Under the pieces are notes generated by a model. That model searched no databases and was not told the origin of the DNA. It was given only the letters and a program-made list of their open reading frames with translations. Shown here one piece after another: positions 760-64,000 of a stretch of DNA of 64,000 nt. Within the stretch, counting starts at the first letter, position 1; each line of letters starts with the position of its first letter. The stretch covers positions 124,001 to 188,000 of IMG/VR virus record IMGVR_UViG_3300020473_000010; one strand, given 5' to 3'. The translations under genes were made by a program, and so were the position numbers.

Positions 760-969
760 TTAAACGTCTTGATTGAAACAATGCACAACGGCATCTCTAT
801 AGAACAAGACTTTTTCTCCTTCTTTGGGGCTACAAAGGGAAGTTTCTTGTAAAATAATCATTGTTTCGACTGTATTCCCTAAGGTAAATTCAACGATTAT
901 TTTATCACCAACAACATCATCGACTGTTCCTAGCATAAGCAAACCAGCTATCATCATTTCATTAATCAT
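760..969 (-). CDS. small hypothetical protein, possible beta-barrel
   Basis: 69-aa ORF overlapping the fpg stop (TAATG). Confidence 0.6.
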   Translation of the reverse strand: MINEMMIAGLLMLGTVDDVVGDKIIVEFTLGNTVETMIILQETSLCSPKEGEKVLFYRDAVVHCFNQDV

Positions 970-1742
970 TATTTCTGAACCTTTGGTACCCAGTATGTTG
1001 ATCTTTTATCATTTGTTTCTTCTTTTATTACTTCGTTTCCATCCGGATCTTCTTGTTTTCCATATATAAGAAACTTTGAAGGGCTGTCAGCATAAGTTTC
1101 GTTAACTTGATATGATTCTTTCATTACTTGCTTAATTGATCTATTAAGTACTGCTAATTCTCCATCTGATAAATCCCCAACATGGCGGTGAGGTGAAATT
1201 TGGGCTAGCCATAAAGAATCAGCTTTTATATAATTCCCTATTCCAGAAACTATGGATTGATCCATTAAAGCCTTGGTAATACCCCATGAGTCTTTATTTC
1301 GTAATCTTGCTATAAAATCTTTGTCCGATAAATCTTCTGAAAGCATATCAGGACCTAAAGATTTTAGCTTATTTATCATGTTGTGTTTACCGCGGACAAA
1401 TTTCAAAGTACCAAAATTACGTTGGTCATTAAAAAATACTTTGGTTTTATCTGATAAAACAAATTTTATTCTAGAATGGTTCGTTTGAGAGTTTGACCAA
1501 AAACCTGTCATGCCAAACGTAGAATATATAAATGTTTCTTTTTCACAAATCCAGTAACAAAATTTTCCATGGACTCCAGGTCCAATGATTTTTAACGGCA
1601 ATTGTTTAAGAAAATCCTCATATCCTGAAGGGGATTTCTTACTGTATCTTCCAGAAAGTATTTCTATAGAAATTATTGTTTTTCCGGAAATTTGAGAAGC
1701 TAATTGTTCTCCGTTTCTTTTAACCTCTGGTCCTTCTGGCAT
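969..1742 (-). CDS. Fpg/Nei family DNA glycosylase/AP lyase without zinc finger
   Basis: N-terminal MPEGPEV, HGKF, FGMTG, DQRNFG, LGPD, H2TH motif LMDQSIVSGIGNYIKAD; C-terminal RSTYWVPKVQK lacks CxxC. Confidence 0.92.
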   Translation of the reverse strand: MPEGPEVKRNGEQLASQISGKTIISIEILSGRYSKKSPSGYEDFLKQLPLKIIGPGVHGKFCYWICEKETFIYSTFGMTGFWSNSQTNHSRIKFVLSDKTKVFFNDQRNFGTLKFVRGKHNMINKLKSLGPDMLSEDLSDKDFIARLRNKDSWGITKALMDQSIVSGIGNYIKADSLWLAQISPHRHVGDLSDGELAVLNRSIKQVMKESYQVNETYADSPSKFLIYGKQEDPDGNEVIKEETNDKRSTYWVPKVQK

Positions 1743-7961: not shown

Positions 7962-10475
7962 TTATCCGCATGCGCCAAAGCCGCATGCAGTACATGTTTG
8001 ACAACCTTCTTGATAAATGATTGTACCTTCAGCACCACAATTTGTACATGTATTAACTGAAGCTTTTGTTCCATCTGCTATATATTTTTTTAAACATCGA
8101 GCGATTACTTTAGAGAAAGAAAACATATCTGCTTCTTTATCTTTTTGAATTTGTTCCACTAAATACTGGACTGGGGCGCCATGGCGTAATGCCAAACTAA
8201 TTGTTCTCGTATATCCTGCATAATTTGGATTATCGAAAACGCTAACAACATCCTTGATAGCCAATGCGTCGTCGTCTTCTCCAATTCTTAAATCGTATTT
8301 ATTTGCTGTAGTTTTATACGATCTTTTAGTGAGGCTTCCAAATTTGTGTTTGCGAGGTACCTCAATTAGCTCTGCTTTTCCACCTATAACTTCATATGGC
8401 CGGCCGTCTAGCAATCCAACAAGAACAACCCATTTGTCATCTTTGACAGCTGTATGGTATATATCACAATCAAGAGTTTCAGGGCGCTTAGGAGCATGTC
8501 TTATTTTTATTTTTTCAGGCTGAGGCTTTTTGTTGGATTCAACTAAAACTCCAGATCTAGATCCATCTCTATAAATAGTAATTCCTTTACATCCAGATTC
8601 CCACCCTGCTTCATAAACTTTTTTAACTGTTTCAACGTCTATATCTTCTGGAAGATTAGTAGTGTTTGATATTGCATGACATACCCATTTTTGGGCTGCA
8701 GCTTGAATCCAAACCTTATTAACCCAATCAATTTCATTGGCTGTTGCCCCAGAATAAGGGCTAATGTTTACCAAGTGTTCATCATCGTACTCTATTTGCG
8801 TATTCATTTCACCAGCGTTAATCTGTGAATCCATCCATTCTTTAAATCTATGGTGATAAACCGTATACTCTTGCCATTTGTCGCCTAAGTCATCAGTGAA
8901 ATCTACTCTAACATCACCATCTTGTGGGTTTATTTTCCTTCGTCGTGTGTAATGCAACATAAATGCTGGTTCAATCCCGGAAGTTGTTTGTGTTAAACAA
9001 GAAACAGATCCAGCTGGAGCAGTTGTCGTGTTGGCAATATTTCTTCGTCCATAAATTTTATAATTGTTATATGTTTCTTCATCTAATTCGTTAAGAATTC
9101 TTTGTAAAAACGGGTGCTCTTTTTCTTTAGATGGATCACAGATTGGAAAACATCCTCTTTCTTTTGCTAGGTTTATTGATTCCGTATAAGATCCTATAGC
9201 TAAATTTTTATAAAAATGTTCAACTATAGAAATACTTTTTTCTGACCCATAAGTTACTCCTAACATAGCAATTGCGTCGCCGACTCCGGTAACACCTAAT
9301 CCCGTTCTTCTTCCTTGGATCGCTCTATCTCGAATAAAAAGCCACAAATCTTTTTCTATTTTCTTTATGTTTTCAGATTCCGGATCTGAATCTAGTTTTT
9401 CTAGAATTTTATCGATCTGCTCTAATTCTAAATCTATCATATCGTCCATTAAGCGTTGACCTTTTTTGACGATGTTTAAATATTTTTTGGTATTAAATTT
9501 GGCTTTATTTGTCCATGGGTGATCAATAAACGCAGTAAGATTTATTAACATTAATCGACAAGAATCGCCTGGGGATAATATTATTTCTCCACAAGGGTTG
9601 GTTGATGTAGAGCCAAAACCTTCATCTGAATAAATGTCTGATGGGGTATTTTTAATTGCAGTATCCCAAAAAAGAATTCCTGGCTCTGCACTTTTGTGTG
9701 CAGATTCTATAATTTCGTTCCATACCTCTTTGGCATTTACCATTGATGTAATTTTTGGTGATTCCGATTCAACAGGCCAGCGGAGCTGATATTCCTCTCC
9801 TGTTTTGACGGCTTTCATAAATTCGTCACTTACCCTAACCGAAATATTAGCACCTGTTACTTTTTTTAGATCTCGTTTAATTTTAACAAAATCTAAAACT
9901 TGTGGATGGTGTACCGAAATTGAAAGCATTAGGGCACCGCGGCGGCCGCCTTGTGCAACTTCTCGACAGGAATTCGAAAATCTTTCCATGAATAACTCTA
10001 TTCCATCGGTAGTTCTAGCAGCGTTTTTGCATGTTACTCCGCGGGGGCGGATATTTGATATATCAAACCCAACACCTCCTCTTCTTTTCATAATCTGAAC
10101 TTGTTGTTGGTCTGTATAAAGGATTCCGCCATAAGAATCTTGTGGAGAATCTATTACAAAACAATTTGATAATGATTGGACCTGGAATGGATTTCCAATT
10201 CCAGACATAGGTGAACCTTGTGGGACAATTTGCTTAAAACCAGAAAACAAATCATAGATTTCTTGGCGAGATAAAGGGTTTGGATATTTTTCTTCAATTC
10301 TAGCGAATTCTGTTGCTAATCTTTTATGCATATCATCCGGATTTAATTCATAATAATTATCATCCAGGTCTCTTAAGGCATATTTGGTAACCCACACGTT
10401 TGTGGCTAATTCATCTCCTCCAAAATATTCTAGCGTGAAATTTTTCACCTCTTCCTTTGTGTAAGTTTTTGGCAT
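7962..10475 (-). CDS. nrdJ: class II (adenosylcobalamin-dependent) ribonucleotide reductase
   Basis: KYALRD, LSNCFV, GGVGFD, QGGRRGA, TNPCGEI, RRTGLG, TTAPAG, SGIEP, CKGITIYRDGSR; C-terminal TSCPD-like region with CxxC...EGCxxCxxCG; no R2 gene adjacent. Confidence 0.88.
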   Translation of the reverse strand: MPKTYTKEEVKNFTLEYFGGDELATNVWVTKYALRDLDDNYYELNPDDMHKRLATEFARIEEKYPNPLSRQEIYDLFSGFKQIVPQGSPMSGIGNPFQVQSLSNCFVIDSPQDSYGGILYTDQQQVQIMKRRGGVGFDISNIRPRGVTCKNAARTTDGIELFMERFSNSCREVAQGGRRGALMLSISVHHPQVLDFVKIKRDLKKVTGANISVRVSDEFMKAVKTGEEYQLRWPVESESPKITSMVNAKEVWNEIIESAHKSAEPGILFWDTAIKNTPSDIYSDEGFGSTSTNPCGEIILSPGDSCRLMLINLTAFIDHPWTNKAKFNTKKYLNIVKKGQRLMDDMIDLELEQIDKILEKLDSDPESENIKKIEKDLWLFIRDRAIQGRRTGLGVTGVGDAIAMLGVTYGSEKSISIVEHFYKNLAIGSYTESINLAKERGCFPICDPSKEKEHPFLQRILNELDEETYNNYKIYGRRNIANTTTAPAGSVSCLTQTTSGIEPAFMLHYTRRRKINPQDGDVRVDFTDDLGDKWQEYTVYHHRFKEWMDSQINAGEMNTQIEYDDEHLVNISPYSGATANEIDWVNKVWIQAAAQKWVCHAISNTTNLPEDIDVETVKKVYEAGWESGCKGITIYRDGSRSGVLVESNKKPQPEKIKIRHAPKRPETLDCDIYHTAVKDDKWVVLVGLLDGRPYEVIGGKAELIEVPRKHKFGSLTKRSYKTTANKYDLRIGEDDDALAIKDVVSVFDNPNYAGYTRTISLALRHGAPVQYLVEQIQKDKEADMFSFSKVIARCLKKYIADGTKASVNTCTNCGAEGTIIYQEGCQTCTACGFGACG

Positions 10476-11878
10476 TAAATATCCTCCTTGGCTGCTTTAA
10501 CTCTCTCCCAAACTTCATTAAGTTTCTTTTTAGGGTTTGTTACGGTTTCGAAATGATCTAGTTCTTCATCTTTTAAGATTTTAAATTTTGATTGGGCTGT
10601 ATTAATTTTAACCGCCCATCGTAGGCCGTCCATACCTGCTCGATTCTTTGCTAAGAACAACCTTCCAAATCCTGTTGCTTTTTCTTCTGGCTTTCTGCTA
10701 AGGCCAACAACAACATCGGAAACTTGGGCCTTTCCATAAGCTTCACCCATGTTTTCTAGCCCAATGATTTCTTCTTTTGCCCCGGCTCGGTTAGACTGAC
10801 TGGCAGTCCAGATTGGAACGTTAAAATCCGCTGCTAGTTGTCTTAGTTCTTCATAAATAAGCTGCAGCTCTAATCTTAACGCGTCATATTGCCGTGTAGA
10901 CTTCATTACATCCGCGTAATCAATTATAACAACTGATGGCCAATAATTTCTTAATTTTAATTTTTCTAAATGGTTTCTAATAGTGTTGACGCTTGCTGTT
11001 CTTGTCGGATAATATTTAATAATTAATTTTCCGTATTCACCATTTTCATATGTAGAAATTACTTTTTCTTTATTATCCATTAAGTCAGAACAATCAATAT
11101 CACAGATATTCGCATCATATCTTTTTCCAGTAAGTGTTTCAGAAAGCTCAAAAGTATAGTGGACAACTGTTTTACCTCTTTTGAGTGCTTCACACCCCAT
11201 TGCAACTAGCCAATGGGATTTTCCAACGCCGGTTGGGGCAACGACAACACCTAATTCTCCTCTTCCTAGCCCACCATCTAAAACTTCTTTTGCATCTAAA
11301 TCTGATATTCCTGTTGGAGTTGTAATTCTTTGGATATCTTGAAATCTTGCTTCAACATCTTCAAAAAACTCATGGCCAATGGAAGAGGGCATTCCTACGG
11401 AAACAGCTTTCCTCATGAGATCAACAACCGGATCAAATTGGTCTCCCTGGACTAATTCAACAGCTTGAGTTAAAGCCTCTTTAAACGCTTGTCTTTTACA
11501 AAAATCTAAAGCTTTATCTTTTACATATGGCAAATCTTGAGGGTTTTTGTTTGCTCTCATCCTTTGAATAAATTGGACAATTTGATCCTTTAAGATTTTT
11601 TCAGAATGTTCTCCTTTTAAATCTTCTCTAATGATTTGGATAAGGAGTTGCATTGTTGGAAAACATCTATATTCTTCAAAATAGCCAAAATATTTTGTAC
11701 AGATATATTGTAAATATTTCAAATCAAAGAATAACGGATTCATTACTTCAATCATTTGTTGAGCCCATTCTTTATCTGTGGCTAAACCTTGAAAGATCTT
11801 TTCTTGAAAACTTTTTCCATATTGACTAAAATTAGTAGTACTGCCAGTTGGTGGCTGGATTCTTAAAGCAGCTGACAT
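10475..11878 (-). CDS. replicative DnaB-like helicase (T4 gp41-like)
   Basis: GGLGRGELGVVVAPTGVGKS, TFELSE, IIDYAD, WTASQSNR, AKNRAG. Confidence 0.92.
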   Translation of the reverse strand: MSAALRIQPPTGSTTNFSQYGKSFQEKIFQGLATDKEWAQQMIEVMNPLFFDLKYLQYICTKYFGYFEEYRCFPTMQLLIQIIREDLKGEHSEKILKDQIVQFIQRMRANKNPQDLPYVKDKALDFCKRQAFKEALTQAVELVQGDQFDPVVDLMRKAVSVGMPSSIGHEFFEDVEARFQDIQRITTPTGISDLDAKEVLDGGLGRGELGVVVAPTGVGKSHWLVAMGCEALKRGKTVVHYTFELSETLTGKRYDANICDIDCSDLMDNKEKVISTYENGEYGKLIIKYYPTRTASVNTIRNHLEKLKLRNYWPSVVIIDYADVMKSTRQYDALRLELQLIYEELRQLAADFNVPIWTASQSNRAGAKEEIIGLENMGEAYGKAQVSDVVVGLSRKPEEKATGFGRLFLAKNRAGMDGLRWAVKINTAQSKFKILKDEELDHFETVTNPKKKLNEVWERVKAAKEDI

Positions 11879-11891: not shown

Positions 11892-12866
11892 TTATTTTGC
11901 TATTGAAGAATTTAGGTTCATAAAAAATACATCGGCATTGAAAGCCCGGGGCATGTCGACACCCTCTGCAACTAAGGCTTTTACTAATCCAAATTTATCT
12001 CTTTTTGTATCTGCGGTATCTATAGAATACTCGAGTCTTTGAATGTGATCTGCGGATAAATTACTAATATCTAATTGCATAATTTTCCAATTTCTTCTGG
12101 CAACATCTGAATTCTCTAACATATTCTTGTACATCTTTAACTGTTTTTGCTTATAACGCTCTTTACATAAACTAAGTATGTCATCCACACTTACAAATTC
12201 TTCAGAGCCTAATTCCGGAAATCGTTTAACTAATGATTTAAAACCACATCCTTTTATACCAGGTATGCCATCAGATGTATCACCAATAAATGTCCGAGCG
12301 GTAATAAAATTTTGAACACTTACTCCATATCTTTCTAGGACATAATTCGAGTCCAATATTTTTTTGCTAGCAGGACTATATTGAACACAATTTTCTGATA
12401 AACATTGGTGCAAATCTTGGTCCATTGAGCAAATAATTTTTTTGTGATTTGGATATTTGTATCTTGCTATATATGCAATGATATCATCAGCTTCACATTG
12501 TTCTACGTACATCTGTTCAACCGGGATGTGCTTTAATAGATTCGTTGTTAAAGCCACCTGGTATAGGAAATTTTCTTCCGTATCAGGGATATCCTCATAG
12601 ATATCGGATCTATTTAGTTTAATTGGTTTTCTATTTAGTTTATACTCAGGAAGGATTGCGCGGCGGCGGGCGGAACCTCCGCCTTCCCAACAAACAATAA
12701 TTTTTGATGGCCTGAATTTTTTTGTAAGCATTCCTAAAGATTTCATGAACCCAACAGCGCCTCCAAGCTGATGACCATGAGATGACATAATTGGAACAAC
12801 GCAATATGCTCTGGCAAAAATATTATATGCGTCGATAAGTAAAATAGGTTTTTCTTCTGTTAGCAT
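11892..12866 (-). CDS. 5'-3' exonuclease / flap endonuclease (T4 RNase H-like)
   Basis: LLIDAYN, YKLNR, EADDIIA, SMDQDLHQ, GDTSDGIPGIKGCG. Confidence 0.9.
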   Translation of the reverse strand: MLTEEKPILLIDAYNIFARAYCVVPIMSSHGHQLGGAVGFMKSLGMLTKKFRPSKIIVCWEGGGSARRRAILPEYKLNRKPIKLNRSDIYEDIPDTEENFLYQVALTTNLLKHIPVEQMYVEQCEADDIIAYIARYKYPNHKKIICSMDQDLHQCLSENCVQYSPASKKILDSNYVLERYGVSVQNFITARTFIGDTSDGIPGIKGCGFKSLVKRFPELGSEEFVSVDDILSLCKERYKQKQLKMYKNMLENSDVARRNWKIMQLDISNLSADHIQRLEYSIDTADTKRDKFGLVKALVAEGVDMPRAFNADVFFMNLNSSIAK

Positions 12867-12875: not shown

Positions 12876-14072
12876 TTATGCTTCTGGATCAAAATAATCA
12901 TCATCTAAATTCATTGCGACTTGTCTTACTTCTTCGTAGCTTTCCGGATTTATATCAACCTGATCTGTTTTTCCCATCAAATTTGCAAAAGCAGCATTAA
13001 AAACTACCTCAACATATGGCCCATATTGAGGGCTGTTCCAAACTTCTCCAAAATCAGCTTTATAGAATTTTTTTTCTTCAATTAATTCCCCTGTTTTGCT
13101 ATTACAGACATTAAGTGTTTTCCAGGCGCCGGTGCCCTCAATGGAAATTGCATTATCTTCCCAAATTGTTGGACCGTTATCTTTTGAATATCTTCGAAGA
13201 ACATCGAATGCTTGCTCGTGTTCAATAATTCCTTTTCCAAAATGAATTTCAAAAAGACAAGTTCTAAACGGAGGAGCAACTTTGTTTTTTATTGTTTTCG
13301 CCGAAACATTAATCCCGATAATATTCCCTTTCTTGTCTTTGATTTGTTGTCCTGCACCCAATTTGATTCGTACAGATGAGTGAAAAGGGATTGCCTTACC
13401 CCCGGGTGTAGTAGTAGGATCTCCATACAGAACTCCAACTTTAGTTCTTATTTGGTTTAGGCATACTAGCAAAACATTTTCATTTGCAATAACACCAGTG
13501 ATTTTTCTCATTCCTTTAGATATTACCCGGGCATTTAAACCTATAGTTTCTTTATCATAATCTCCGATTAATTCTGCTTTAGGAGATGTAGCTGCTACAG
13601 AGTCCCAAATAATTGTAATAGGAACATCTTTTTTAAGGGCTTTTGCTTTCAAAATAGTTTTTTCAGCAATTGAAAGAACTTCTTCTGTGCAATGTGTATC
13701 GACATAGACGAAACGATGTTCAATATCAACCCCTAGAGCGTCTAGGTTCTCTACAGAGGTAGCATTTTCAGTATCGATATATACAACTATGCCTCCAGCT
13801 TCTTGCGTGCTCTTCGCGATCTGGATGGCTATATGAGACTTTCCTATCGAAGGTGGACCAAATATTTCAACAATTCTTCCTTCAGGTAAACCGCCTTTTG
13901 TTTTTCCCGATACTATATAATCTAACTGTCTTGAACCAGTTCGAATCCATCTTTTTACATGAGTTGGGGAATCATCAACAGATAGGTTGTATGCAACACG
14001 AGCACCATGATCTTTGTTGAGAGATTTAATTAGGTCCGCGGTGAAATCATCATCTTTTTTCTTTTTAGCCAT
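12876..14072 (-). CDS. RecA/UvsX recombinase
   Basis: GGLPEGRIVEIFGPPSIGKS, YIDTENA, WDSVAA, LNQIRTKVG, TTPGGKAIPFHSSVRI, KNKVAPPF. Confidence 0.95.
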   Translation of the reverse strand: MAKKKKDDDFTADLIKSLNKDHGARVAYNLSVDDSPTHVKRWIRTGSRQLDYIVSGKTKGGLPEGRIVEIFGPPSIGKSHIAIQIAKSTQEAGGIVVYIDTENATSVENLDALGVDIEHRFVYVDTHCTEEVLSIAEKTILKAKALKKDVPITIIWDSVAATSPKAELIGDYDKETIGLNARVISKGMRKITGVIANENVLLVCLNQIRTKVGVLYGDPTTTPGGKAIPFHSSVRIKLGAGQQIKDKKGNIIGINVSAKTIKNKVAPPFRTCLFEIHFGKGIIEHEQAFDVLRRYSKDNGPTIWEDNAISIEGTGAWKTLNVCNSKTGELIEEKKFYKADFGEVWNSPQYGPYVEVVFNAAFANLMGKTDQVDINPESYEEVRQVAMNLDDDYFDPEA

Positions 14073-14190: not shown

Positions 14191-15003
14191 CTAAAATCCA
14201 ATGTCGCCCTCGAGATCTGCAAACGCATCATCAATATCATCGAAAGACTTTTTAGTATCACCTGATTTTTTTGTTTGAGTCTTTTTCGGAACCTCTGTAT
14301 TTCGAGTGGTGTATGAGGAATTTGTTTCTGATGTATCATTTTCCTCTCCGTCGTCTCCTGTTAGCCAATTATTAACAATTGTCTCAAGCTGCTCATAACT
14401 CTTCATTGTATAAAGATCATCCAAATTAGGAATATTGTTTGTCCATTCTTTGATTTGAGTTTTTGTACCAAGTTCAGTTGTTTTTGGGCGAGGCATTACC
14501 TCGGTCATCGCAAACATTTTGCCTGGAGGCTTTGAACATGTAACTTTTACATCGTGCCCTTCATATACATCGGTGATATCACCATAGTCCGGATCTAGCA
14601 TAATATTAAGCAGAGACTGATAAACAGTTTTGCCAAAAGCCCAAAGTTTTACACCTTCCGACTCTTCACCGCGGACGACTACAGCAGCATATGTTCTCAT
14701 CTTTGGATAAAGCTTTTTAGCCATTTCATAAGATTCTTTGGTTCCTTCATCTTTTAGTTTTTGAATCAGTTCATTAATAGGATCTGGTTTTCCAAATTGA
14801 TAAGGAGCCAAAAGACCCGGGTTATTTCCAATGTTATAATAAAACCAACGTTCCTTAAATGGATTTCCATCGTTGTCAGTAAAACCCAGAATTCTTACTG
14901 TTGCAGTTTCTCCTTCTGGTGGGCGCCACATAGTTCTACGTTTTGAATTTGCTCCTGAAAGCTGGTTTAGTTTTTTGCGAATTGCATCAAAATCAATAGC
15001 CAT
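14191..15003 (-). CDS. single-stranded DNA-binding protein (T4 gp32-like)
   Basis: WRP...VRIL, NPFKERWFYY, GVKLWAFGKTVY, YGDITD..EGHD, acidic C-terminus DDIDDAFADL. Confidence 0.88.
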   Translation of the reverse strand: MAIDFDAIRKKLNQLSGANSKRRTMWRPPEGETATVRILGFTDNDGNPFKERWFYYNIGNNPGLLAPYQFGKPDPINELIQKLKDEGTKESYEMAKKLYPKMRTYAAVVVRGEESEGVKLWAFGKTVYQSLLNIMLDPDYGDITDVYEGHDVKVTCSKPPGKMFAMTEVMPRPKTTELGTKTQIKEWTNNIPNLDDLYTMKSYEQLETIVNNWLTGDDGEENDTSETNSSYTTRNTEVPKKTQTKKSGDTKKSFDDIDDAFADLEGDIGF

Positions 15004-15100: not shown

Positions 15101-15469
15101 TTATTTTTTTGATTTTTTCTTTTTCTTTGATGATTTTTTATATGATGGTCTTTCCGGATCATAAGGATTAGGCGAACCTTTTCCGCCATCTGAACCAGTA
15201 CCAAGAGGTGTCATTGGACCAGAAACTCCGCCGGCTGCTAAGGCATTCATTTCGTCTAATTCTTTACATGCATTCTTGGGTTTTGGTGGAGGCGGTTTTG
15301 GAGCAAATGATAGAAATTCATCTTGAGATCTACTTTTTTCATTAGTTTGATCAGGCTCTCCTAAGAGATCATCGTTGTCATCTTTCTTTTTTCCTTCACA
15401 GCCTTCTACTTCTAATATTAAGTTGCTAATATATTTTCTCAACATTGCTTCATATAAAGCTTTTGACAT
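15101..15469 (-). CDS. hypothetical, probable late/virion-internal protein
   Basis: AGGAG SD; late motif 15496-15510; N-terminal LRKYISNLILE segment. Confidence 0.7.
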   Translation of the reverse strand: MSKALYEAMLRKYISNLILEVEGCEGKKKDDNDDLLGEPDQTNEKSRSQDEFLSFAPKPPPPKPKNACKELDEMNALAAGGVSGPMTPLGTGSDGGKGSPNPYDPERPSYKKSSKKKKKSKK

Positions 15470-15534: not shown

Positions 15535-16068
15535 CTAATTTGACAAAAGTCTAGAAGCTAACAAAAGTTTTCCCATATGGTTTAACGGCTTATTTAAATA
15601 AACACTTTGAATTGCGTTGTATTCTTCCTCTGTTAATTTAACTCCAAATGCTGTTAACAATTGAAATGTAAATTGAATTGAGTTAAATTCATATAAGCTT
15701 TGATTTTTTTTGTAATGCATTCCTAATTTTTCATAGTGCCAATCGCTGTCTTGGGGTAAGCATAAATCTTCTGATAGTGTACCAACTCTTCCAATGTCAT
15801 GCAATAAAGCAACCTTAAACAAACTTTTTGGTTCGCACTGTTTTCCTGTTGCTGCATTAAGTTTTCTCATCATCGTAAGAGTGTTCAAGATAGATACCAA
15901 TAATCCACCATCCTCGCATCCATACTCATCCTTCTGCGGGTTTGCGGGAGCTATGGCTAGTCTCTCACCAATTCCCTCGAGGAGATCCTTTAGATTGTCA
16001 TCTTCAAACCTTTCAATAATCTCCGTATATTGTTCGAAGTTCTGTTTTATATTTTCAAACTCAGCCAT
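15535..16068 (-). CDS. HD-domain-like protein, degenerate active site
   Basis: APA...GGL...ALLHDIGRVG...LPQDSDWH; GGAG SD before ATG 16068; promoter TTATAA-17-TAGAAT at 16137-16109. Confidence 0.7.
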   Translation of the reverse strand: MAEFENIKQNFEQYTEIIERFEDDNLKDLLEGIGERLAIAPANPQKDEYGCEDGGLLVSILNTLTMMRKLNAATGKQCEPKSLFKVALLHDIGRVGTLSEDLCLPQDSDWHYEKLGMHYKKNQSLYEFNSIQFTFQLLTAFGVKLTEEEYNAIQSVYLNKPLNHMGKLLLASRLLSN

Positions 16069-16141
16069 TTGCTTCTCCACTAGTAGTATTGTTTAATAAT
16101 CTTATAATATTCTACTAGGGAAAAGATTGGTTTATAAATGT

Positions 16142-16708
16142 TTATAAATTCCAAGTACCTGATCTACCATTCTTTGAGAAATATACTAATATACTATCTC
16201 CGGAGACTTCTACCTCTAAAGCTGAATTAATATCTGATTTTGTTACTTGGGCTGCTTGTCCAGAAATAACAGCTGCTATACATAAATTTTTTATCCAAAA
16301 ACAACATATTCGCTTTGATTGTTGTGGTAAAGGTTGACCTTTTTTGTTGAGTACCCCTTGCTGCCAAAGAGGAGTACATTGTATTAAAACCCCTTTATTG
16401 CTTCCAGCATTGTTTGATACTAAAGTTGCTGAGTCAAATACTTTTGATGGATTATCTGAACCTATGAATTGCTGGCAAATTTTACTTAAATCGGTGATGC
16501 AATTATCTTTTCCTTTTCCCGATGGAGTGCCGGCTATTCCAAATGAGGCCATAATTTTTTGGGCACCGTCTACTGTTACGGCTAAAGATTTGTATTCTTT
16601 TTGTTCGTCAGAATATCTAATTCCTCTAAATATTGATTGGGTTTCTAAATCAATACGAGGCAAGTCTTTAGATTCAGATAGTAAGATATGTTCCCATAAA
16701 GATTTCAT
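16142..16708 (-). CDS. hypothetical protein
   Basis: 188-aa ORF abutting the polymerase stop codon. Confidence 0.7.
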   Translation of the reverse strand: MKSLWEHILLSESKDLPRIDLETQSIFRGIRYSDEQKEYKSLAVTVDGAQKIMASFGIAGTPSGKGKDNCITDLSKICQQFIGSDNPSKVFDSATLVSNNAGSNKGVLIQCTPLWQQGVLNKKGQPLPQQSKRICCFWIKNLCIAAVISGQAAQVTKSDINSALEVEVSGDSILVYFSKNGRSGTWNL

Positions 16709-17752
16709 TTATAACTCCGATACCGTAACTGGTAATTCAATTCCTTCAATTATTTGCAGCTTGTCTGGAATTTTGCCGCTACCACTAATTATGAGGCCAT
16801 CATGAATAACCCAGTGAGGAATTATATCATTTGATGATTCAACAAGATTTGCGAACCCTAAAAGAGAGGCGTCGACGGCTGTACTTTGTAGCCACAAAGC
16901 TAATAATTTCCGACCTATAGTTTTTTTTACCTCAATTGGTCTCCCAAAATAATTTTCTATCCAACCATCACTTACTTCAGATTCAAGTTGCGAAACCCAT
17001 TCATCTAAAGCAAAAAGCCTAGAAATTTCCGGAACAACTCTACTTCCATACATACTAGAAATTATTGAAACTTTTATATATGACCTGTCACCATTAATGT
17101 TTAATTCTTTAGCAGCCCAATCATAGAGATCACCATCAACCGTTTTTCCTATAAGGGCTAATAGCAATCTAGGTTCCATCGAAGAAAAATCTATAGACTT
17201 TCCTTTAATTACATTTCTGTGTTCTGATTTCATTGTTAAACAATTTGGGCCTGAGGCTACAGTTAATCTTCCGGTTTTTGTATGTGCACGATTATATTTT
17301 ACTTTAGGGAATTTTCCATTTTTTAAAATAAAACCTGGATAATTTATATTCATTGCCTCTAGAGATCGAAACCTTGTAATGTTTGCTATTGCTGGCTGCA
17401 GGGAGTATAAAAAGTCTTGAGTTTTTTTATAGGTAGGAATATATTTGTGGTTTTCTATTTTTTTATAAAAGTCAAATATGTTTGGGATTATTTCTTTTAG
17501 CCTTTTTTTATATGGTAATCCTATTAAGCCAAAATAATATGGATTGTTCAAGCCTAAAACATTGGCCATTTTTTGATATTTTTCTTCGACAAGAAAAGGA
17601 GGTTGTTCTCCAAACATTTTCATTAATGGATCGATAGAATATTTATGATCACCAAAAACTAAATCATCTTCTTGTATTTCTTTCCAAGAAAATGTTCCAT
17701 CATACCCTAGATGGTTTTCGGAACCAAGATATTTTCCATTTACAACTAACAT
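16709..17752 (-). CDS. minimal family A DNA polymerase (polymerase domain only)
   Basis: TKTGRL...GPN, motif A DFSSMEPRLL, motif B RSYIKVSIISSMYG, NYFGR, LQSTAVD, motif C IHDG. Confidence 0.8.
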   Translation of the reverse strand: MLVVNGKYLGSENHLGYDGTFSWKEIQEDDLVFGDHKYSIDPLMKMFGEQPPFLVEEKYQKMANVLGLNNPYYFGLIGLPYKKRLKEIIPNIFDFYKKIENHKYIPTYKKTQDFLYSLQPAIANITRFRSLEAMNINYPGFILKNGKFPKVKYNRAHTKTGRLTVASGPNCLTMKSEHRNVIKGKSIDFSSMEPRLLLALIGKTVDGDLYDWAAKELNINGDRSYIKVSIISSMYGSRVVPEISRLFALDEWVSQLESEVSDGWIENYFGRPIEVKKTIGRKLLALWLQSTAVDASLLGFANLVESSNDIIPHWVIHDGLIISGSGKIPDKLQIIEGIELPVTVSEL

Positions 17753-17758: not shown

Positions 17759-17787
17759 ATTATAGGTTTAAAATTGTAATTTTACAT
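17759..17787 (-). promoter_or_regulatory. sigma70-like promoter, predicted leaderless transcript
   Basis: ATGTAA-17-TATAAT-6 nt-ATG, no SD. Confidence 0.65.
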
Positions 17788-20700
17788 TAAAATTGTTTAC
17801 CTAATTTTGTAGAGAGATCGGAAGATGCTTGGATACCTTTTGTAAGGTTTTCAACCAGAGAATTAAATTGACCTGACTTATTAAGCGGAACTAATTCAAA
17901 GCTTGTTTTGAATTCTCCCGGACTTAATTTATGACTAACAGATGACACTAAATAAACATCATCGATTGTGGTACCTGTTTGAAAATCAACAAAAAACTGT
18001 TGACCAAAATTTAACATAGGACACCCGAAGGAATCCATTGAAAGTTTCACAGGGAAAACTCTGAGTGGTAAACCATCATCATGATCGTTTACTGGTGCTT
18101 CTGATGATCTGTTTTTTTGGCGCTTCATATGAATGACTTGCATTTGAGGATTTGAATTGGTTGCTAATGAAGCGTTTAAGATTGCCGAGTATTCTGTACC
18201 AAATTTAATTGTTGGCATGTATTTTGTAAACATATACCGCAGACCGTTTGGGCCGCCTTTTATCCGAAAATATTTCTTTTGAAGATTTGTGTTAATTTCT
18301 TCGTTTGTACTAACAGAAGGTTTTGATTCAACCATTTCTACAATATTTAAGGCCTCTAGTACCTCTAGTTGTTTTGAAAATAATTCTGCATATTGAGAAT
18401 CAGAGTCTCTTTGGGGATCTGTGTTTGTTTTATCTTTGGTAGAAGAAGAACCCATAATTTCTTTATTTATTAATCCAAATGAATCATTTTTAATAGAATT
18501 CCACATTTCTGCAAATCCTGGATATGCCGTTGCTGATTTATCGAAAAAATGGACTCTGCAAATTGTTTTTGCAGGATCTTTGGTTGCTGGTACACACTCA
18601 ATATAAATTGAAATAGATGGTTTTTTAAATCTATATTCTGCATTAGGGTTTTTATATGCTTTTTTGAGAACACCCTCTTTTACAGATGGCAATGTTAGTT
18701 TAAAAGCGGCATCCTTTTTTTCATTTTTGTGTTTAATTAATGTTGCTTTCCCTGTCTTTTCATCCCGGGAATATATGGATCCAAAGCCGTATGCATGCGC
18801 CGCCGTATTACTAAAAAATTCTCTGTTCATAAACCCTATAAATTGTCCAATAGTAAACGTTTTGGAAGATTTCATTTTTTTCAAAATAGCGGATTTAAAA
18901 TACTTTAATTCTATTGGAAAGGATCCAACATCGTCGTCACGAGCAAATGATGCAAACTCATTCATTGGATAGAAAATCATTTGTACTTCATCAAAATTAT
19001 GGGTTGCTGCTAATGGGGAGCCAATAAAATTACACGCTATTTTCGCAAATGACGCATATTTTGCAGGACTGTCATCTGGATCAATTTTCTGTTCGGAATT
19101 TTTTTTGAGGAAAGGATCATTTCCATCTGTACATCTTTTGATTTTTTCTCGTGATATTTTTTCTATTCTTGCACGGTAACTTTTTAATCCACCATTTGCA
19201 GTTGATGACCCAGAACCTTTTGACCCATTAACAGCCGAAAGTAATGCATCTGATAATTCAGACATTGCATCGCCGTCAGCTTTTGAGGCTTTATGGATTT
19301 TTTTCTGAATTTCCATTAATTTTTTAATATCTTCATCCGACATTGACAACATAGAAGATACACTATTAACTTTTCCTAAAACTTCTCCACCAGAAACAAT
19401 GTCAGAAAGACTTTTAAATCCAAGTGATTTTAGTTTTTTTCGAACAGAATTAATGGTTTTTACACATTCTTGAATATGGTCTAGAGCATTTCCAGCATCG
19501 TCATCCGTAATTAATTTATATGCTGTTTCTCTAGATCCTTTTGAATATAGTTTTAGATTAACTTTTACTTCCCCATTTGGATCAAAAGAATAAGAACTGT
19601 TCATTACACCGAATTTTTCCTTGCTTCTCATTGAGTTTAATAACATTCCATACGGAGATTCTTTGTTTGGGTGAGACCATCCAAATTCTACTAATATTTC
19701 AATATCCCCTAAGCCTCCCGGGGTAACAAGCTGTGTAATTTCATGTAATCTGCTTCTGTCGTGTAGTATAAAAGACATTTCAGCTGTCTTAGTTGACAAG
19801 GTACCGACTGAAGGCAAAACTTTTATATTAAATGATTGCAGTGTCATAAACGGTCTAAATTTATCAATGACTGATGTTCCGCGATTAGGGATTATTGTTC
19901 CTGCCGTTGTTGAAATTGGGGGGCCAATATCTTGATATGGCTCATTTCCATTAACTAGCGTTTGGGGTGCTGTAAAGACTTCCATTCCAGCAAGCGTTTT
20001 TTCACTTTCGTCGTCTTGGGTTGCTAATAAGCTAGCCGATTCTTTTTTTACTGGCTTTCCGGAAAGAAAATCAGCTATATTTTTATCTACTTTAGAATTT
20101 CCATCTAAAAACCTAAATAAAGAAATTCCTTGGCCAATTATATCATCATCTAAAACCGGGGTATTTGTAATTAATTGTACATCCAAATATGGAACACATT
20201 GGCTGATTTCTATAGATGGGAGAGCACTCATAAATATTGATACAGCGCCTGTATATCTGTTTGCAAAATTTAATGCAGCTGAATGGAATTGAACTATAGC
20301 CAAAGATGGTAATTCTTTAGACGGATCTGCCGTATGACTATTGAGTGTGGATTCTGGTGAAATTAAATCTGTAATACTTATGTCTTTACAAACGTGTGGG
20401 GCTGTTATTGGATTATAGGCGGACTTGTCCGCTGTTACTGTGAATAACCGATTATTCCCTGTTGTCTTGCTGCCTGCGATCGCAGTTGCAACGGCAGTAC
20501 CTTGGGCTTTCGTCATAAAAGAAGAAACTCGATTATTAAATTCTGAAATGAACAATCCTCCATCTGTTAATCCTAATATTCCGCTAGTAAGAAAGTTAAT
20601 AGGATCTTCAGCATCTGTTGAGGCTTTTTTTACAATATCCGCTGAAGGATTTGCTTTAATCGTAGATTTTCCATTAAGCATGTCTGCTTCAACTTGCTGT

Positions 20701-63000: not shown

Positions 63001-63218
63001 GGTGCTATGGAAGACATTTCAGTAAACCACCAATTAAGACAGTCAATAAGTTCTGGGGATATCCCTTGAGTTTTTGAATGTACAATATCACCTGCGATGA
63101 CGAAACAATCTGGGTTTATATCTCGACACTGTTCGAACATGTCGGTAAATGAGCGTCTGTATTCTGCATGTCGAGTTAATCCTCTCCAATGCACGTCCGC
63201 AATGTGTACTATTTTCAT
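60087..63218 (-). CDS. fused Mre11/SbcD nuclease-Rad50/SbcC ATPase (gp47-gp46 fusion)
   Basis: ADVH, AGDIVH, GNHD, GDIH; Walker A GKNRCGKS, Q-loop AQG, coiled coil, signature SGMEK, IVDEGFGTLD, ISH. Confidence 0.92.
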   Translation of the reverse strand: MKIVHIADVHWRGLTRHAEYRRSFTDMFEQCRDINPDCFVIAGDIVHSKTQGISPELIDCLNWWFTEMSSIAPVHVMLGNHDGLVLNTDRQDAISPILRALNLRNVHLYRKSAVYPDPEGENINWCVFSPFDLDGWSSIKPTPGKINIALYHGAVWGSHTDTDWMLDGDCKMDLFKTFDFTMLGDIHKRQQIDADGRIWYCGSTIQQNYGESGEKGFLLWDISGVNDWSVDFYPVTHHNPFVTVDFLENIQATVKECDKWPDGSRFRIRSYKQLDPKTQRKLSTVLRRVKSADEVVFKIDPKSSNDLGIDEATANKVRIENLSKSETHKNLLREYYGEETESNEFWEEVDKILDDIVPKASGTEIKGNSWSVQRMTFDNTFGYGSDNSVDFTKLNGIIGIFGKNRCGKSSIPGTLMYGLYNTNDRGISSLLHVVNTRKPFCAAEVTFSVNGKLYRLERQTVRHKAKKRAETTVTHLNLYEVDEDGSILKDLSGEQRRETEESIRKLIGTSDEFMMTSFAAQGNMNAFISKGSTERKRILSNFLGLDVFDSLHSLVKEEATGIKVMLKRLQVKDWVQEIRNKRIEIKSQADRREELQAELEQQKSNYNELKDIAERDYTDSFVDPRLISSKERTLITKQRQYSDLGDSVLTIEESIELIEERIEKYEIIKQQFPIEGLKRRLKNLDELKLSLSTMKARLNSEKRLLSSQTKSVRLLAEVPCGDNFPTCKFIKDSHKNKSLIEDQRNLVNDLNESVLSSESNVEELESEGLRNKIDKYASMLNKESSDRLSLVRLESDLTDKNTRMTILEQEIASNKKELSELKLRASNNENEELLNIRRQMKLITEKINEINTEIVSNAEQTGRSRSMISQLRREQTEYDRLQVEWKVYDFLIKATSWRGIPTYIMSKQIPVINAELSTILQDTTGFTIELEVDERNTDVFLNYGDSRRPIECASGMEKMVSSLALRVALSNVSHLNKSDMFIVDEGFGTLDPQNVEAVTSLLHRLKKFYKQILIISHVDVVKDVVDEVIEITKKGPDSLVVYG

Positions 63219-64000
63219 AGTTCTTGTATCCTGTTTAATAGGTTGGAATTCTCATTCCATTTTACTGGCTTTGAGACCAAATGTACAACTTCTTTTGGGC
63301 TTAGGTCACCAACGTCACCTTCCGTTAAATTTAAATAAGAAACTTCTAGATTATAACTAGCCAAAAGATCAGCAATATTGTCTTGTTTTTTCTTGGCGTC
63401 CGGATCTAAACATAAAATAACCGGAGTATTATTGGCGGCTAATTCATAAAACAATAAAGAGTTTTCAGACAAAGAAGATCCAAGTAAACATGTTGAATTA
63501 AGATTGATACACTTGACTAAATCTAGGGGACCTTCAACAAGATATACCGGTTGAGTAAAATCTAGATCGATTTCGTTAAATATGATAGCGACCTTAGGGG
63601 CCTTTGCGTTAACGTATTTAATATAAGCGTCGGAATCGATAGCCCGGGCGACCCAATAATTAATATCTCCGGAAGAGTCAAAAGAAGGAATGATTAATCG
63701 GCGCCGGAGTTTCCAATCATCAGAATATCCGATACGGTATCTCCAAAGCATTTGATCTGTAATTCCCCGAGAGTGGGCGTATTTGCGGATCGCAATTGCG
63801 TCTGGATCATGGAGAGATTCCATGATAAGATTAAATCCTTCAGGTAATACGATAGGATCGAATTCGGGTATAGAAAGGGAATTGTTGTAGGTGAAGCCGG
63901 CTGGTTTGAAACGCTGCATGTATTCAGAAACCAAATTTGGTTTCTTCATCTGAATTAGCTTTGCGACATTTCTTCCTCTGATGTTGCATACCCAGCAGTG
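63215..64000 (-). CDS. DNA primase (gp61/DnaG-like), N-terminus beyond the window
   Basis: frame open to 64000 and reads HCWVCNIRG (zinc ribbon) into MKKP; SRGI, RLIIP, YWVAR, KY.N, TOPRIM VEGPLD, CLDPDA. Confidence 0.9.
   Translation of the reverse strand, partial: HCWVCNIRGRNVAKLIQMKKPNLVSEYMQRFKPAGFTYNNSLSIPEFDPIVLPEGFNLIMESLHDPDAIAIRKYAHSRGITDQMLWRYRIGYSDDWKLRRRLIIPSFDSSGDINYWVARAIDSDAYIKYVNAKAPKVAIIFNEIDLDFTQPVYLVEGPLDLVKCINLNSTCLLGSSLSENSLLFYELAANNTPVILCLDPDAKKKQDNIADLLASYNLEVSYLNLTEGDVGDLSPKEVVHLVSKPVKWNENSNLLNRIQEL

What the first reader, a model, noticed from the sequence alone, without database searches (positions are those of the whole stretch)
16709..17752. 347-aa minimal family A polymerase with Ile at the 762 position
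Seen: all PolA polymerase motifs are present in order within ~200 C-terminal residues, with no recognisable exonuclease domain and a much shortened thumb/fingers. Motif B RSYIKVSIISSMYG places Ile at the E. coli F762 position (F, Y or L are the usual phage states). Motif C is HDG rather than HDE. The neighbouring replisome is T4-type (gp32, gp41, primase), which usually pairs with a family B enzyme. Inference: a stripped gap-filling or accessory polymerase, or one whose missing domains are supplied in trans.
Basis: partly seen in the sequence, partly recalled or inferred. Interest (0 to 1): 0.65.

Follow-up and report, generated by a model that had tools for sequence, protein, structure and literature searches.

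The report
Miniature family A polymerase, jumbo phage
This gene encodes a real but unusually small (347-residue) DNA polymerase of the Pol I family that lacks a proofreading domain, and it is conserved in a group of uncultured aquatic jumbo phages whose main replicase is a bacterial-type DnaE enzyme, so it is most likely their gap-filling helper polymerase.

Summary
Window 16709-17752 (-) is an intact 347-aa ORF carrying the TGR motif and motifs A, B, 6 and C of family A polymerases in order. It has Ile at the E. coli F762 position and HDG in place of HDE.

Pfam, PHROGs and PDB sequence searches miss the protein itself. It is linked (phmmer E 1e-15 to 1e-30) to ~400-aa relatives that score on PF00476. 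Its AlphaFold model (pLDDT 93.9) superposes on KlenTaq and Bst Pol I (Z ~20-21).

In 121 distinct relatives both catalytic Asp, the Glu steric gate, and the R, K, Y, Q and H residues are invariant. The 762 position is always I, L or M. The 883 position is A, G or S in 119, so HDG is a family trait and not decay.

The genome is a 288.7-kb marine phage record. It has no PolB and no DEDD exonuclease hit. It does have a 1195-aa DnaE just outside the window, a DnaB helicase, a DnaG-like primase, a gp32-like SSB, RecA and a stand-alone FEN.

DnaE was found in 13 of 15 related large phage contigs and FEN in 15 of 15.

Best reading: an active, proofreading-less, low-processivity accessory polymerase acting as a "split Pol I" with FEN. 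No description of this PolA subfamily was found.

The parts
16709..17752 (-). Gene for the 347-aa miniature family A DNA polymerase (P0001), stop codon included
   Evidence: ORF. About 90 homologs, of which the ~400-aa ones carry PF00476. AF2 pLDDT 93.9. KlenTaq Z 20.9.
17264..17275 (-). TGRL motif (T160-L163; R162 = Klenow R668)
   Evidence: G and R are invariant in 121/121 relatives, T in 119/121. Aligned to Taq TGRLS.
17168..17191 (-). Motif A, DFSSMEPR (D188 = D705 catalytic Asp; E193 = E710 steric gate)
   Evidence: D and E are invariant in 121/121. Aligned to Taq DYSQIELR.
17045..17086 (-). Motif B / O-helix, RSYIKVSIISSMYG (R223, K227, I231 = F762 position, Y235, G236)
   Evidence: K, Y and G are 121/121 and R is 120/121. 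The 762 position is I 80, L 27, M 14 and never F or Y. Aligned to Taq RRAAKTINFGVLYG.
16871..16888 (-). Motif 6, QSTAVD (Q289 = Q849)
   Evidence: Q is invariant in 121/121. Aligned to Taq QGTAAD.
16796..16804 (-). Motif C, HDG (H317 = H881, D318 = D882 catalytic Asp, G319 at the E883 position)
   Evidence: H and D are 121/121. The third position is A 100, G 16, S 3, C 1, E 1. Aligned to Taq HDE.
16142..16708 (-). 188-aa protein of unknown function. Its ATG directly follows the polymerase TAA (TAAATG). It is a conserved downstream neighbour.
   Evidence: Junction sequence. The family lies immediately downstream of the polymerase in 31 of 45 related loci that had a downstream ORF. AF2 pLDDT 91.1, alpha/beta sandwich, no PDB match at E<=1e-3.
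15535..16080 (-). HD-domain protein (181 aa), a conserved member of the same gene string
   Evidence: Weak Pfam HD hit here (E 0.0044); clear in the L006 ortholog (E 3e-7). It lies directly downstream of the polymerase in 9 related loci.
14191..15003 (-). gp32-like single-strand DNA-binding protein, followed by a strong terminator-like hairpin at 14142-14165 (-)
   Evidence: PF08804 E 1.5e-10 and phrog_1192 E 1.3e-27. Hairpin of 9 pairs (8 GC) plus a T run.
12876..14072 (-). RecA/UvsX-type recombinase
   Evidence: PF00154 E 1.3e-62 and phrog_97.
11892..12866 (-). Stand-alone 5'-3' exonuclease / flap endonuclease (FEN), the proposed working partner
   Evidence: PF02739 E 9.8e-29 and PF01367. 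Present in 15 of 15 related large contigs and in every inspected neighbourhood.
10475..11878 (-). DnaB-family replicative helicase
   Evidence: PF03796 E 1.7e-16 and phrog_19 E 6e-70.
63215..64000 (-). DnaG-like primase (open frame of 321 aa that runs past the window end)
   Evidence: PF08275 match at G000:C1:187599-187820, 32.5 bits summed.
969..1742 (-). Fpg/Nei-type DNA glycosylase. A base-excision step that would create gaps for a small polymerase to fill.
   Evidence: PF01149, PF06831 and PF21025.

Best explanation
The gene encodes a catalytically active, proofreading-less, miniature family A (Pol I-type) DNA polymerase. It keeps the palm, the dNTP-binding O-helix, the Glu steric gate and both metal-binding Asp residues. 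The 3'-5' exonuclease domain is reduced to a ~55-residue N-terminal stub, and the thumb and fingers are shortened.

It is not the phage's replicase. A 1195-aa DnaE (family C) is encoded 835 bases before the window start, and the phage also has DnaB, a DnaG-like primase, a gp32-like SSB and RecA. I propose the mini-PolA is the phage's own 'split Pol I': a distributive short-patch polymerase. It would fill the gaps left when the separately encoded FEN removes RNA primers on the lagging strand, and the gaps left by recombination or base-excision repair.

Shown: homology, fold, residue conservation, gene context and co-occurrence. Inferred: catalytic activity, low processivity, dNTP specificity and the gap-filling role.
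For: Homology
- phmmer links the protein to ~400-aa relatives at E 1e-15 to 1e-30.
- Those relatives score E 1e-19 on PF00476.
- The family profile hits KlenTaq at E 3e-4 over profile positions 129-345.
- 29 of the 30 nearest ESM Atlas clusters carry PF00476.

Fold
- The AF2 model has pLDDT 93.9 and pTM 0.91.
- All listed Foldseek matches are family A polymerases.
- VIA-align gives Z 20.9, rmsd 4.1 A and 320 aligned residues to KlenTaq 304-827; Bst large fragment gives Z ~20.

Constraint
- In 121 distinct relatives at 27-73% identity, the equivalents of R668, D705, E710, K758, Y766, Q849, H881 and D882 are 121/121.

Accessory status
- The genome has no PolB hit and no PF00476 hit at all. In three related genomes the only PF00476 hit is the mini-PolA itself.
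- It has a full DnaE with PHP, alpha, finger and HhH domains.
- DnaE is present in 13 of 15 related 100-298 kb records, including two 100% complete DTR genomes.

FEN link
- A stand-alone FEN lies 3.8 kb away in the same strand-wise gene string and in 15 of 15 related records.
- The order mini-PolA, HD protein, gp32, RecA, FEN, DnaB, RNR is conserved.

Other points
- A terminator-like hairpin follows gp32, so the polymerase may be co-transcribed with the SSB.
- An Fpg/Nei glycosylase is present.
- T7 RNA polymerase, of the same fold superfamily, works with HDS at motif C and Met at the 762-equivalent position. Loss of the third carboxylate therefore need not abolish catalysis.
- Background: bacteria need a FEN activity almost universally, and Pol I orthologs without active proofreading are common (PMC12926913).
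Against: - No biochemical data exist.
- Klenow E883 is listed among the conserved catalytic residues (PMC10520511). It is absent here, so activity could be low or altered.
- The N845 equivalent is also lost in the 347-aa subgroup (A or S).
- PolAs are reported to need at least an inactive exonuclease domain for stability (PMC10201439). That makes a stand-alone 347-aa enzyme surprising and leaves room for an unrecognised partner.
- No phage ligase (PF01653, PF01068) or beta-clamp domain (PF02768) was found, so the maturation pathway would be incomplete without host factors.
- The polymerase and FEN are in the same module but not adjacent.
- No RNA run holds the gene.
Confidence: 0.55

Rival explanations
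1. It is an obligatory second replisome polymerase rather than a repair or maturation enzyme. For example, it could be a dedicated primer-extension or lagging-strand polymerase that hands off to DnaE. This would be analogous to two-polymerase replisomes such as B. subtilis DnaE/PolC.
For: Linkage to the replication module is strict and lineage-wide. DnaE co-occurs with it. It may be co-transcribed with gp32.
Against: The shortened thumb and missing exonuclease stub argue against long synthesis. No clamp or clamp-binding evidence was found. Nothing distinguishes this reading from gap filling in silico.
Confidence: 0.15
2. It is a specialised repair or lesion-tolerance polymerase, for example short-patch base-excision repair after the phage Fpg/Nei glycosylase. 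Alternatively it is a polymerase adapted to an altered nucleotide pool set by the neighbouring HD phosphohydrolase and the thymidylate-synthase-like genes.
For: An Fpg/Nei glycosylase lies in the window. A conserved HD-domain neighbour is present. ThyX and a second, divergent ThyA-like gene are present. The family lacks proofreading and has an unusual active site: I/L/M at position 762, A/G/S at 883, and N845 lost in the short subgroup.
Against: The glycosylase is 15 kb away, and I did not test whether it is conserved in the lineage. The HD protein has no assigned specificity. There is no evidence of base modification. This reading overlaps with the best explanation rather than excluding it.
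Confidence: 0.15
3. It is the catalytic subunit of a PolA-plus-small-partner DNA primase like CcPol-MP of SCCmec elements, with the tightly abutting 188-aa downstream gene as the partner.
For: It is an N-terminally truncated PolA followed directly (TAAATG) by a small conserved protein, in 31 of 45 related loci. CcPol-MP and related pairs are truncated PolAs that gain priming activity from a small neighbour (PMC7581432, PMC10061031, PMC10201439).
Against: The phage has a DnaG-like primase. The 188-aa protein is predicted to be an alpha/beta sandwich, not an OB fold, and has no PDB match. It is absent from about a third of related loci, where the HD gene follows instead. The family profile's closest solved relative is Taq Pol I; no CcPol comparison was made.
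Confidence: 0.05
4. It is a catalytically dead relic or an eroding fragment of a polA gene, or a split polymerase whose exonuclease and thumb parts are encoded elsewhere.
For: The third active-site carboxylate is missing (HDG). Pfam does not recognise the protein.
Against: The ORF is intact, with a conserved start and length in about 120 relatives. All dNTP-binding and metal-binding residues are invariant at 27-73% identity. The whole chain folds confidently as one compact unit. There is no DEDD exonuclease hit in the genome and no PolA-like piece in the flanking genes.
Confidence: 0.05

Closest known systems
Bacterial DNA polymerase I large fragment (KlenTaq, Bst LF, Klenow)
   Same: Same palm-fingers-thumb fold (Z 20-21). 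The TGR motif and motifs A, B, 6 and C are in the same order, with the same catalytic Asp pair, Glu steric gate, and O-helix Arg, Lys and Tyr. Among NCBIfam models, Pol I (PRK05755, TIGR00593) scores best for the ~400-aa relatives.
   Different: 347 aa against ~540-600. There is no 3'-5' exonuclease domain, only a ~55-residue stub. Thumb and fingers are shortened. Motif C is HD[A/G/S], not HDE. The 762 position is I, L or M. N845 is lost in the short subgroup. The 5'-3' exonuclease is a separate gene. The protein itself scores below Pfam and NCBIfam thresholds.
CcPol-MP / PolA-SSB primases of Bacillota mobile elements (PMC7581432, PMC10061031)
   Same: A family A polymerase with a truncated N-terminal exonuclease region, encoded directly upstream of a small protein with no recognisable sequence family, on a mobile genome.
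   Different: The partner here is not an OB fold and is not universal in the lineage. A DnaG-like primase is present. The host genomes are 270-300 kb aquatic phages, not SCC-type elements. No priming evidence exists.
Split T7-like PolA of S-SBP1-type cyanophages (PMC10201439)
   Same: A phage polymerase gene that corresponds to the pol domain only.
   Different: In those phages the exonuclease gene sits next to pol, and together they rebuild a normal T7-like enzyme that is the replicase. Here no exonuclease gene was found in the genome and the replicase is DnaE.
Virioplankton PolA classes defined by residue 762 (Phe, Tyr, Leu; PMC6302109)
   Same: Marine viral PolA. Leu762 occurs in 27 of 121 family members.
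   Different: Most members have Ile (80) or Met (14), states that the paper's three classes do not include. The genes are too short to span the I547-Q926 region used there. They sit in DnaE-type jumbo genomes, not in PolA-replicated phages.
T7-like single-subunit RNA polymerases
   Same: Motif C lacks the third carboxylate (T7 RNAP HDS). The 762-equivalent residue is aliphatic or thioether (Met635). Motif B reads RSVTKRSVMTLAYG in T7 RNAP against RSYIKVSIISSMYG here.
   Different: Motif A here is the DNA-polymerase type with the Glu steric gate, and TGR is present. All structural matches are DNA polymerases. The profile score to T7 RNAP is negligible. This is a resemblance of two positions only, not membership.

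Membership tests
Family A DNA polymerase (Pol I-like, PF00476) | Motif A with catalytic Asp (Klenow D705) and Glu710 | tested here: met
   D188 and E193 are invariant in 121/121 relatives and align to Taq DYSQIELR.
Family A DNA polymerase (Pol I-like, PF00476) | Motif B, R...K...[F/Y/L]...YG on the O-helix | tested here: met
   R223, K227, Y235 and G236 are conserved. The variable B3 position is Ile here and I, L or M across the family.
Family A DNA polymerase (Pol I-like, PF00476) | Motif C, HDE, with the second catalytic Asp and the adjacent Glu | tested here: inconclusive
   H317 and D318 are invariant. The Glu is replaced by G here and by A, G or S in 119 of 121 relatives. The two metal-ligand Asp residues are present; the third carboxylate is not.
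Family A DNA polymerase (Pol I-like, PF00476) | TGR motif and motif 6 Gln | tested here: met
   T160, G161, R162 and Q289.
Family A DNA polymerase (Pol I-like, PF00476) | Score above the Pfam gathering threshold | tested here: not met
   No Pfam hit for the protein, even at E 10, or in six-frame search of the genome. Relatives at 27-33% identity pass (70.6 bits against a 34.3 cut-off) and are linked to the query at E 1e-15 to 1e-30.
Family A DNA polymerase (Pol I-like, PF00476) | Right-hand palm/fingers/thumb fold of Pol I | tested here: met
   AF2 pLDDT 93.9. KlenTaq Z 20.9 with 320 of 347 residues aligned. Only PolA chains appear in the top lists.
Klenow-like core (exonuclease plus polymerase domains) as in the 19 PolA clusters of PMC10201439 | A 3'-5' exonuclease domain, active or vestigial, N-terminal to the pol domain | tested here: not met
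   Only ~55 beta-rich residues precede the helical region. No PF01612 or PF00929 hit in the genome. Whether the stub is a remnant of that domain was not resolved residue by residue.
Bacterial Pol I orthologs (PolA1) | Fused N-terminal 5'-3' exonuclease (FEN) domain | tested here: not met
   FEN is a separate 324-aa gene at 11892-12866.
CcPol-MP / PolA-SSB primase | Adjacent small OB-fold (SSB-like) partner | tested here: not met
   The 188-aa neighbour is predicted as an alpha/beta sandwich (pLDDT 91) with no significant PDB match.
CcPol-MP / PolA-SSB primase | Primer-independent DNA synthesis; stands in for a conventional primase | not testable with these tools
   Needs biochemistry. A DnaG-like primase is present in the genome.
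Split T7-like PolA | Neighbouring gene encoding the matching 3'-5' exonuclease | tested here: not met
   The flanking genes have no exonuclease family hit. None was found in the genome.

The most novel reading that the evidence does not exclude
This is an undescribed subfamily of the smallest natural family A DNA polymerases (347-410 aa). These enzymes would fold and work without an exonuclease domain, a thumb tip or the third active-site carboxylate.

They would form the fixed second polymerase of a DnaE-based replisome in a widespread lineage of 270-300 kb aquatic jumbo phages. Their active-site state resembles T7 RNA polymerase at two positions (HD[A/G/S], and I/L/M at 762). That state might give them unusual substrate behaviour, such as relaxed nucleotide selectivity, lesion bypass or initiation with the help of the abutting 188-aa protein.
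Probability: 0.15. Interest if true: 0.75.

Novelty: new variant of a known kind. Interest (0 to 1): 0.55.

Why it matters
- Current classification of family A polymerases lists 19 clusters, all built on an exonuclease-plus-polymerase core, and states that the exonuclease domain is needed for stability (PMC10201439). A conserved clade of 347-410-aa enzymes without that domain would be a natural counter-example. IMG/VR holds 454 matching stretches.
- It would also be a compact scaffold of possible biotechnological interest.
- It shows that DnaE-type jumbo phages, a large and mostly uncultured marine group (PMC9123017), carry their own Pol I substitute in two pieces: FEN plus mini-PolA. This bears on how independent of the host their lagging-strand synthesis is.
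- It extends the known states of the ecologically used 762 marker to Ile and Met.
- It shows that Pfam-based PolA surveys miss part of this clade.

Tried and rejected
- Direct family scans of the protein gave nothing. Pfam at E 10, PHROGs at E 1, PDB by single sequence, and tblastn against 50,697 phage records all failed. NCBIfam gave only a 13.6-bit partial hit.
- The DnaE has no close cultured relative (28% identity or less), so no named phage group could be assigned.
- The 'moraphage' jumbo lineage (PMC12619734) is a PolB lineage and unrelated.
- A complex prediction of the polymerase with the 188-aa neighbour returned no verdict (scores 0.45, 0.01, 0.02). It is not used either way.
- The 188-aa protein showed no BLAST similarity to the 344-aa gene that occupies its place in L006. 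It has no PDB fold match at E<=1e-3.
- The sigma-70-type promoter scan was at chance level (27 found, 25.9 expected).
- No ligase (PF01653, PF01068), beta-clamp domain 3 (PF02768), Prim-Pol or Toprim_2 hit was found in the genome. For divergent phage proteins these absences are weak evidence.
- No RNA run holds the gene.
- The contig-based loci L004, L006 and L008 could not be searched as whole records.
- The large representative-protein search was not run. The word search and family scans had already settled what the protein is.
- A rooted phylogeny against the 19 published PolA clusters was not attempted, because no reference set was at hand.
- Per-residue structural mapping of the N-terminal stub to the exonuclease domain was not available.
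Full report
**1. The observation**

Window 16709-17752 (-) is an uninterrupted ATG-to-TAA frame of 347 codons. The start is credible: 39 aligned homologs begin at the same Met and are co-linear from residue 1.

- TGRL at residues 160-163
- Motif A, DFSSMEPR, at 188-195
- Motif B, RSYIKVSIISSMYG, at 223-236
- Motif 6, QSTAVD, at 289-294
- Motif C, HDG, at 317-319

A profile built from the family aligns to KlenTaq at E 3e-4 over profile positions 129-345. It pairs motif A with DYSQIELR, motif B with RRAAKTINFGVLYG, motif 6 with QGTAAD and motif C with HDE. Ile231 is therefore the Taq F667 / Klenow F762 position, and Gly319 is the E883 position. The Taq-to-Klenow residue equivalences are from established literature, not from a tool.

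**2. Is it a family A polymerase?**

The protein itself is invisible to Pfam (E up to 10), PHROGs, a single-sequence PDB search and tblastn against 50,697 phage records. A six-frame PF00476 search of the whole genome also finds nothing.

The word-index search gave 90 proteins:
- About 60 of 345-357 aa with no Pfam domain, mostly from marine assemblies (Tara, ENA, JGI), at 33-73% identity.
- A second tier of about 380-410 aa at 27-33% identity (E 1e-15 to 1e-30) that carries PF00476. I confirmed this directly (E 1e-19, 70.6 bits against a cut-off of 34.3).

NCBIfam ranks DNA polymerase I models first for that second tier. 29 of the 30 nearest ESM Atlas clusters carry PF00476.

An AlphaFold2 model made with the 39-row alignment has mean pLDDT 93.9 and pTM 0.91, with no low-confidence segment. 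All listed Foldseek matches are family A polymerases: KlenTaq, Klenow, Bst, Pol nu, M. smegmatis Pol1 and apicoplast Pol (best E 2.5e-8). VIA-align gives Z 20.9, rmsd 4.1 A and 320 aligned residues against KlenTaq residues 304-827. It gives Z about 20 against the Bst large fragment.

**3. Anatomy**

Sequence homology to Taq starts near residue 120-130. Upstream of that, the model has:
- four short strands and a helix in residues 1-46
- short helices at 57-77
- two antiparallel helices at 79-99 and 104-116

The whole model superposes on a 524-residue span of KlenTaq that begins inside its vestigial exonuclease domain. I infer that residues 1-55 are a stub of that domain and that the two helices are a thumb without its tip. 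I had no per-residue structural alignment, so this is inference.

Spacing between motifs is compressed:
- Motif A to motif C is 130 residues, against 177 in Klenow.
- The 347-aa subgroup lacks about 20 residues after motif B that the ~400-aa subgroup retains.

**4. Conservation**

I aligned 121 distinct relatives of at least 300 aa.

Invariant in 121/121 are the equivalents of R668, D705, E710, K758, Y766, G767, Q849, H881 and D882. R754 is 120/121.

| Position (Klenow) | States in 121 relatives |
|---|---|
| 762 | Ile 80, Leu 27, Met 14; never Phe or Tyr |
| 883 | Ala 100, Gly 16, Ser 3, Cys 1, Glu 1 |
| N845 equivalent | Asn 47, Ser 40, Ala 33, Pro 1 |

The Asn at 845 is seen in the ~400-aa members aligned, and Ala or Ser in the 347-aa subgroup.

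HDG and Ile762 are therefore stable family characters under purifying selection, not signs of erosion.

E883 is normally counted among the conserved catalytic residues (PMC10520511), and the 19 published PolA clusters are described as strictly conserving the catalytic residues (PMC10201439). The family is therefore atypical at this site.

I checked the T7 record. T7 DNA polymerase has VHDE and Tyr at B3. T7 RNA polymerase, of the same fold superfamily, has IHDS and RSVTKRSVMTLAYG with Met at that position. The third carboxylate is thus not indispensable in this superfamily. The invariant Glu steric gate and the TGR motif keep the present enzyme on the DNA-polymerase side.

**5. Genome context**

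The window is bases 124001-188000 of a 288,697-bp virus record, estimated 96% complete.

Not found in six-frame family searches:
- PolB
- PolA-type or DnaQ-type exonuclease
- Prim-Pol
- Ligase
- Beta-clamp domain 3

Found in the genome:
- A 1195-aa DnaE at C1:119578-123165 (-) with PHP, pol III alpha, fingers and HhH domains. It ends 835 bases before the window start.
- A DnaG-like primase core at the far end of the window.

Downstream of the polymerase on the minus strand lie, in order:
1. the 188-aa protein
2. an HD-domain protein
3. a 122-aa acidic/basic protein
4. a gp32-like SSB
5. RecA
6. a stand-alone FEN
7. a DnaB helicase
8. class I/II RNR

A strong terminator-like hairpin follows gp32. 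Further on are ClpP, an amidase, a glutamine-synthetase-like gene, a Dam methylase, ThyX and an Fpg/Nei glycosylase.

Upstream are a 1014-aa protein with no family, a LysM-like 97-aa protein and very large ORFs, which are probably structural.

**6. Distribution**

IMG/VR holds 454 stretches that encode a relative. Many are on contigs of 100-298 kb.

The gene order is conserved in all neighbourhoods inspected: a ~1000-aa protein, the mini-PolA, the 188-aa family and/or the HD protein, gp32, RecA, FEN, DnaB, RNR.

Across 15 related large records:
- DnaE is present in 13. The two without it are fragments of 32-36% completeness.
- FEN is present in 15.
- In three near-complete relatives (two of them 100% complete, with terminal repeats) the only PF00476 hit is the mini-PolA itself.

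No cultured phage is close: DnaE identity is 28% or less. Marine jumbo-phage surveys describe a mostly metagenomic cluster in which about half the genomes carry PF07733 (PMC9123017). I found no mention there of a small PolA.

The DNA is held by marine metagenome runs from several samples. No RNA run holds it.

**7. Mechanism**

Shown here:
- A constrained, complete Pol I-type active site minus the third carboxylate.
- No proofreading module.
- A reduced thumb.
- A separate replicase.
- A separate FEN in the same module.

Inferred:
- The enzyme extends primers with dNTPs, given the steric-gate Glu.
- It is distributive and error-prone relative to DnaE.
- Together with FEN it does what bacterial Pol I does in one polypeptide: primer removal and gap filling on the lagging strand.
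- It also carries out repair synthesis after recombination (RecA) or base excision (Fpg).

Background supports the weight given to FEN. A FEN activity is near-universal in bacteria, while Pol I's own proofreading is often inactive (PMC12926913).

I put about 0.9 on 'a genuine PolA-fold enzyme under selection for catalysis'. I put about 0.8 on 'accessory, not the replicase', and about 0.55 on the specific split-Pol I role.

**8. Rivals**

*Obligatory second replisome polymerase.* This cannot be separated from gap filling in silico.

*Repair or altered-pool specialist.* The conserved HD neighbour, the Fpg gene and the two thymidylate-synthase-type genes suggest it. It overlaps with the main reading.

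*CcPol-MP-like primase (PMC7581432, PMC10061031).*
- For: the truncated PolA directly abuts a small conserved gene (TAAATG), and that family follows the polymerase in 31 of 45 loci.
- Against: the partner is predicted to be an alpha/beta sandwich with no PDB match rather than an OB fold. It is missing from a third of loci. The phage also has a DnaG-like primase.
- The complex prediction gave no verdict and is not counted.

*Dead relic or split gene.* Sections 4 and 5 contradict both.

**9. Comparison and novelty**

The protein works like, and is homologous to, the polymerase domain of bacterial Pol I.

It fails membership of three groups:
- The Klenow-like exonuclease-plus-polymerase core that defines the 19 published clusters.
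- Pol I orthologs, because there is no fused FEN.
- The CcPol-MP pair and the split T7-like pair.

In the papers searched I found no description of a 350-400-aa PolA clade, of Ile or Met at position 762, or of HD[A/G/S] at motif C. Database names for the family are 'hypothetical protein', apart from one automatic 'DNA polymerase-1'.

I rate it a new variant of a known kind: interesting to polymerase and phage-replication specialists, but not a new principle.

Noticed in passing
G000:C1:119578-123165 (-), ending 835 bases before the window start (locus L002:15581-19165): A full-length DnaE-type family C polymerase (1195 aa) with PHP, pol III alpha, fingers and HhH domains. No DnaQ-type exonuclease was found in the genome, so proofreading would depend on the PHP domain or on host factors. 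The PHP metal ligands were not checked.
   Followed up: partly
window 16142-16708 (-): A 188-aa protein whose ATG directly follows the polymerase stop codon. It is a fast-evolving family (19% mean column identity) found right after the polymerase in 31 of 45 related loci. It is confidently predicted as an alpha/beta sandwich with no PDB match. Function unknown.
   Followed up: partly
window 15101-15469 (-); L057:11197-12003 and L071:10146-10910: The 122-aa acidic/lysine-rich ORF shares the motifs LLGEPD and TPLGTG.DGGKG with the C-terminal extensions of the 188-aa-family proteins in L057 and L071. The two genes are therefore fused in some relatives and separate here.
   Followed up: no
window 17787-20831 (-): A 1014-aa protein with no Pfam, PHROG or NCBIfam hit lies immediately upstream of the mini-PolA in nearly every related locus (phmmer E down to 1e-227). 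It follows a LysM-like 97-aa protein (20828-21121) and very large ORFs, so it is probably a tail or baseplate component.
   Followed up: partly
window 15535-16080 (-); L006:12146-12736: A small HD-domain phosphohydrolase is conserved next to the polymerase across the lineage. Its specificity is unknown. The placement recalls nucleotide-pool enzymes that sit beside phage polymerases, which is my own recollection and was not tested.
   Followed up: partly
window 969-1742 (-): A complete Fpg/Nei-type DNA glycosylase (N-terminal, H2TH and C-terminal domains). This is an uncommon base-excision repair gene for a phage.
   Followed up: no
window 2316-3038 (-) and L002:14646-15524 (-): Two thymidylate-synthase-type genes: ThyX (E 5e-48) and a divergent ThyA-like protein (E 2e-14). 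The second could be a dNMP hydroxymethylase, which would hint at modified bases.
   Followed up: no
window 4955-6013, 6000-6419, 7335-7952 (-); L002:7040-7732 and 12653-13645: Auxiliary genes: a glutamine-synthetase-like gene, a 4HBT thioesterase, a ClpP protease, an Fe/Mn superoxide dismutase and an NAD-dependent sugar epimerase/dehydratase.
   Followed up: no
window 14142-14165 (-): A G8/C8 hairpin followed by a T run, directly after the gp32-like gene. It is the strongest terminator-like site in the region and probably ends the transcription unit that contains the polymerase.
   Followed up: no
G004:C1:186143-187345 and G011:C1:57265-60755 (records behind L084 and L043): In two related phages the DnaE match is interrupted. 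In one it is a single 1341-aa frame with a gap between the two halves of the Pfam match. In the other it is two frames (693 and 246 aa) about 2.7 kb apart. This suggests an intein, an intron or a homing-endonuclease insertion.
   Followed up: no
G009 (record behind L089, 160 kb): IMG/VR classes this relative as a provirus, unlike the others (linear or with direct terminal repeats). This was not examined.
   Followed up: no
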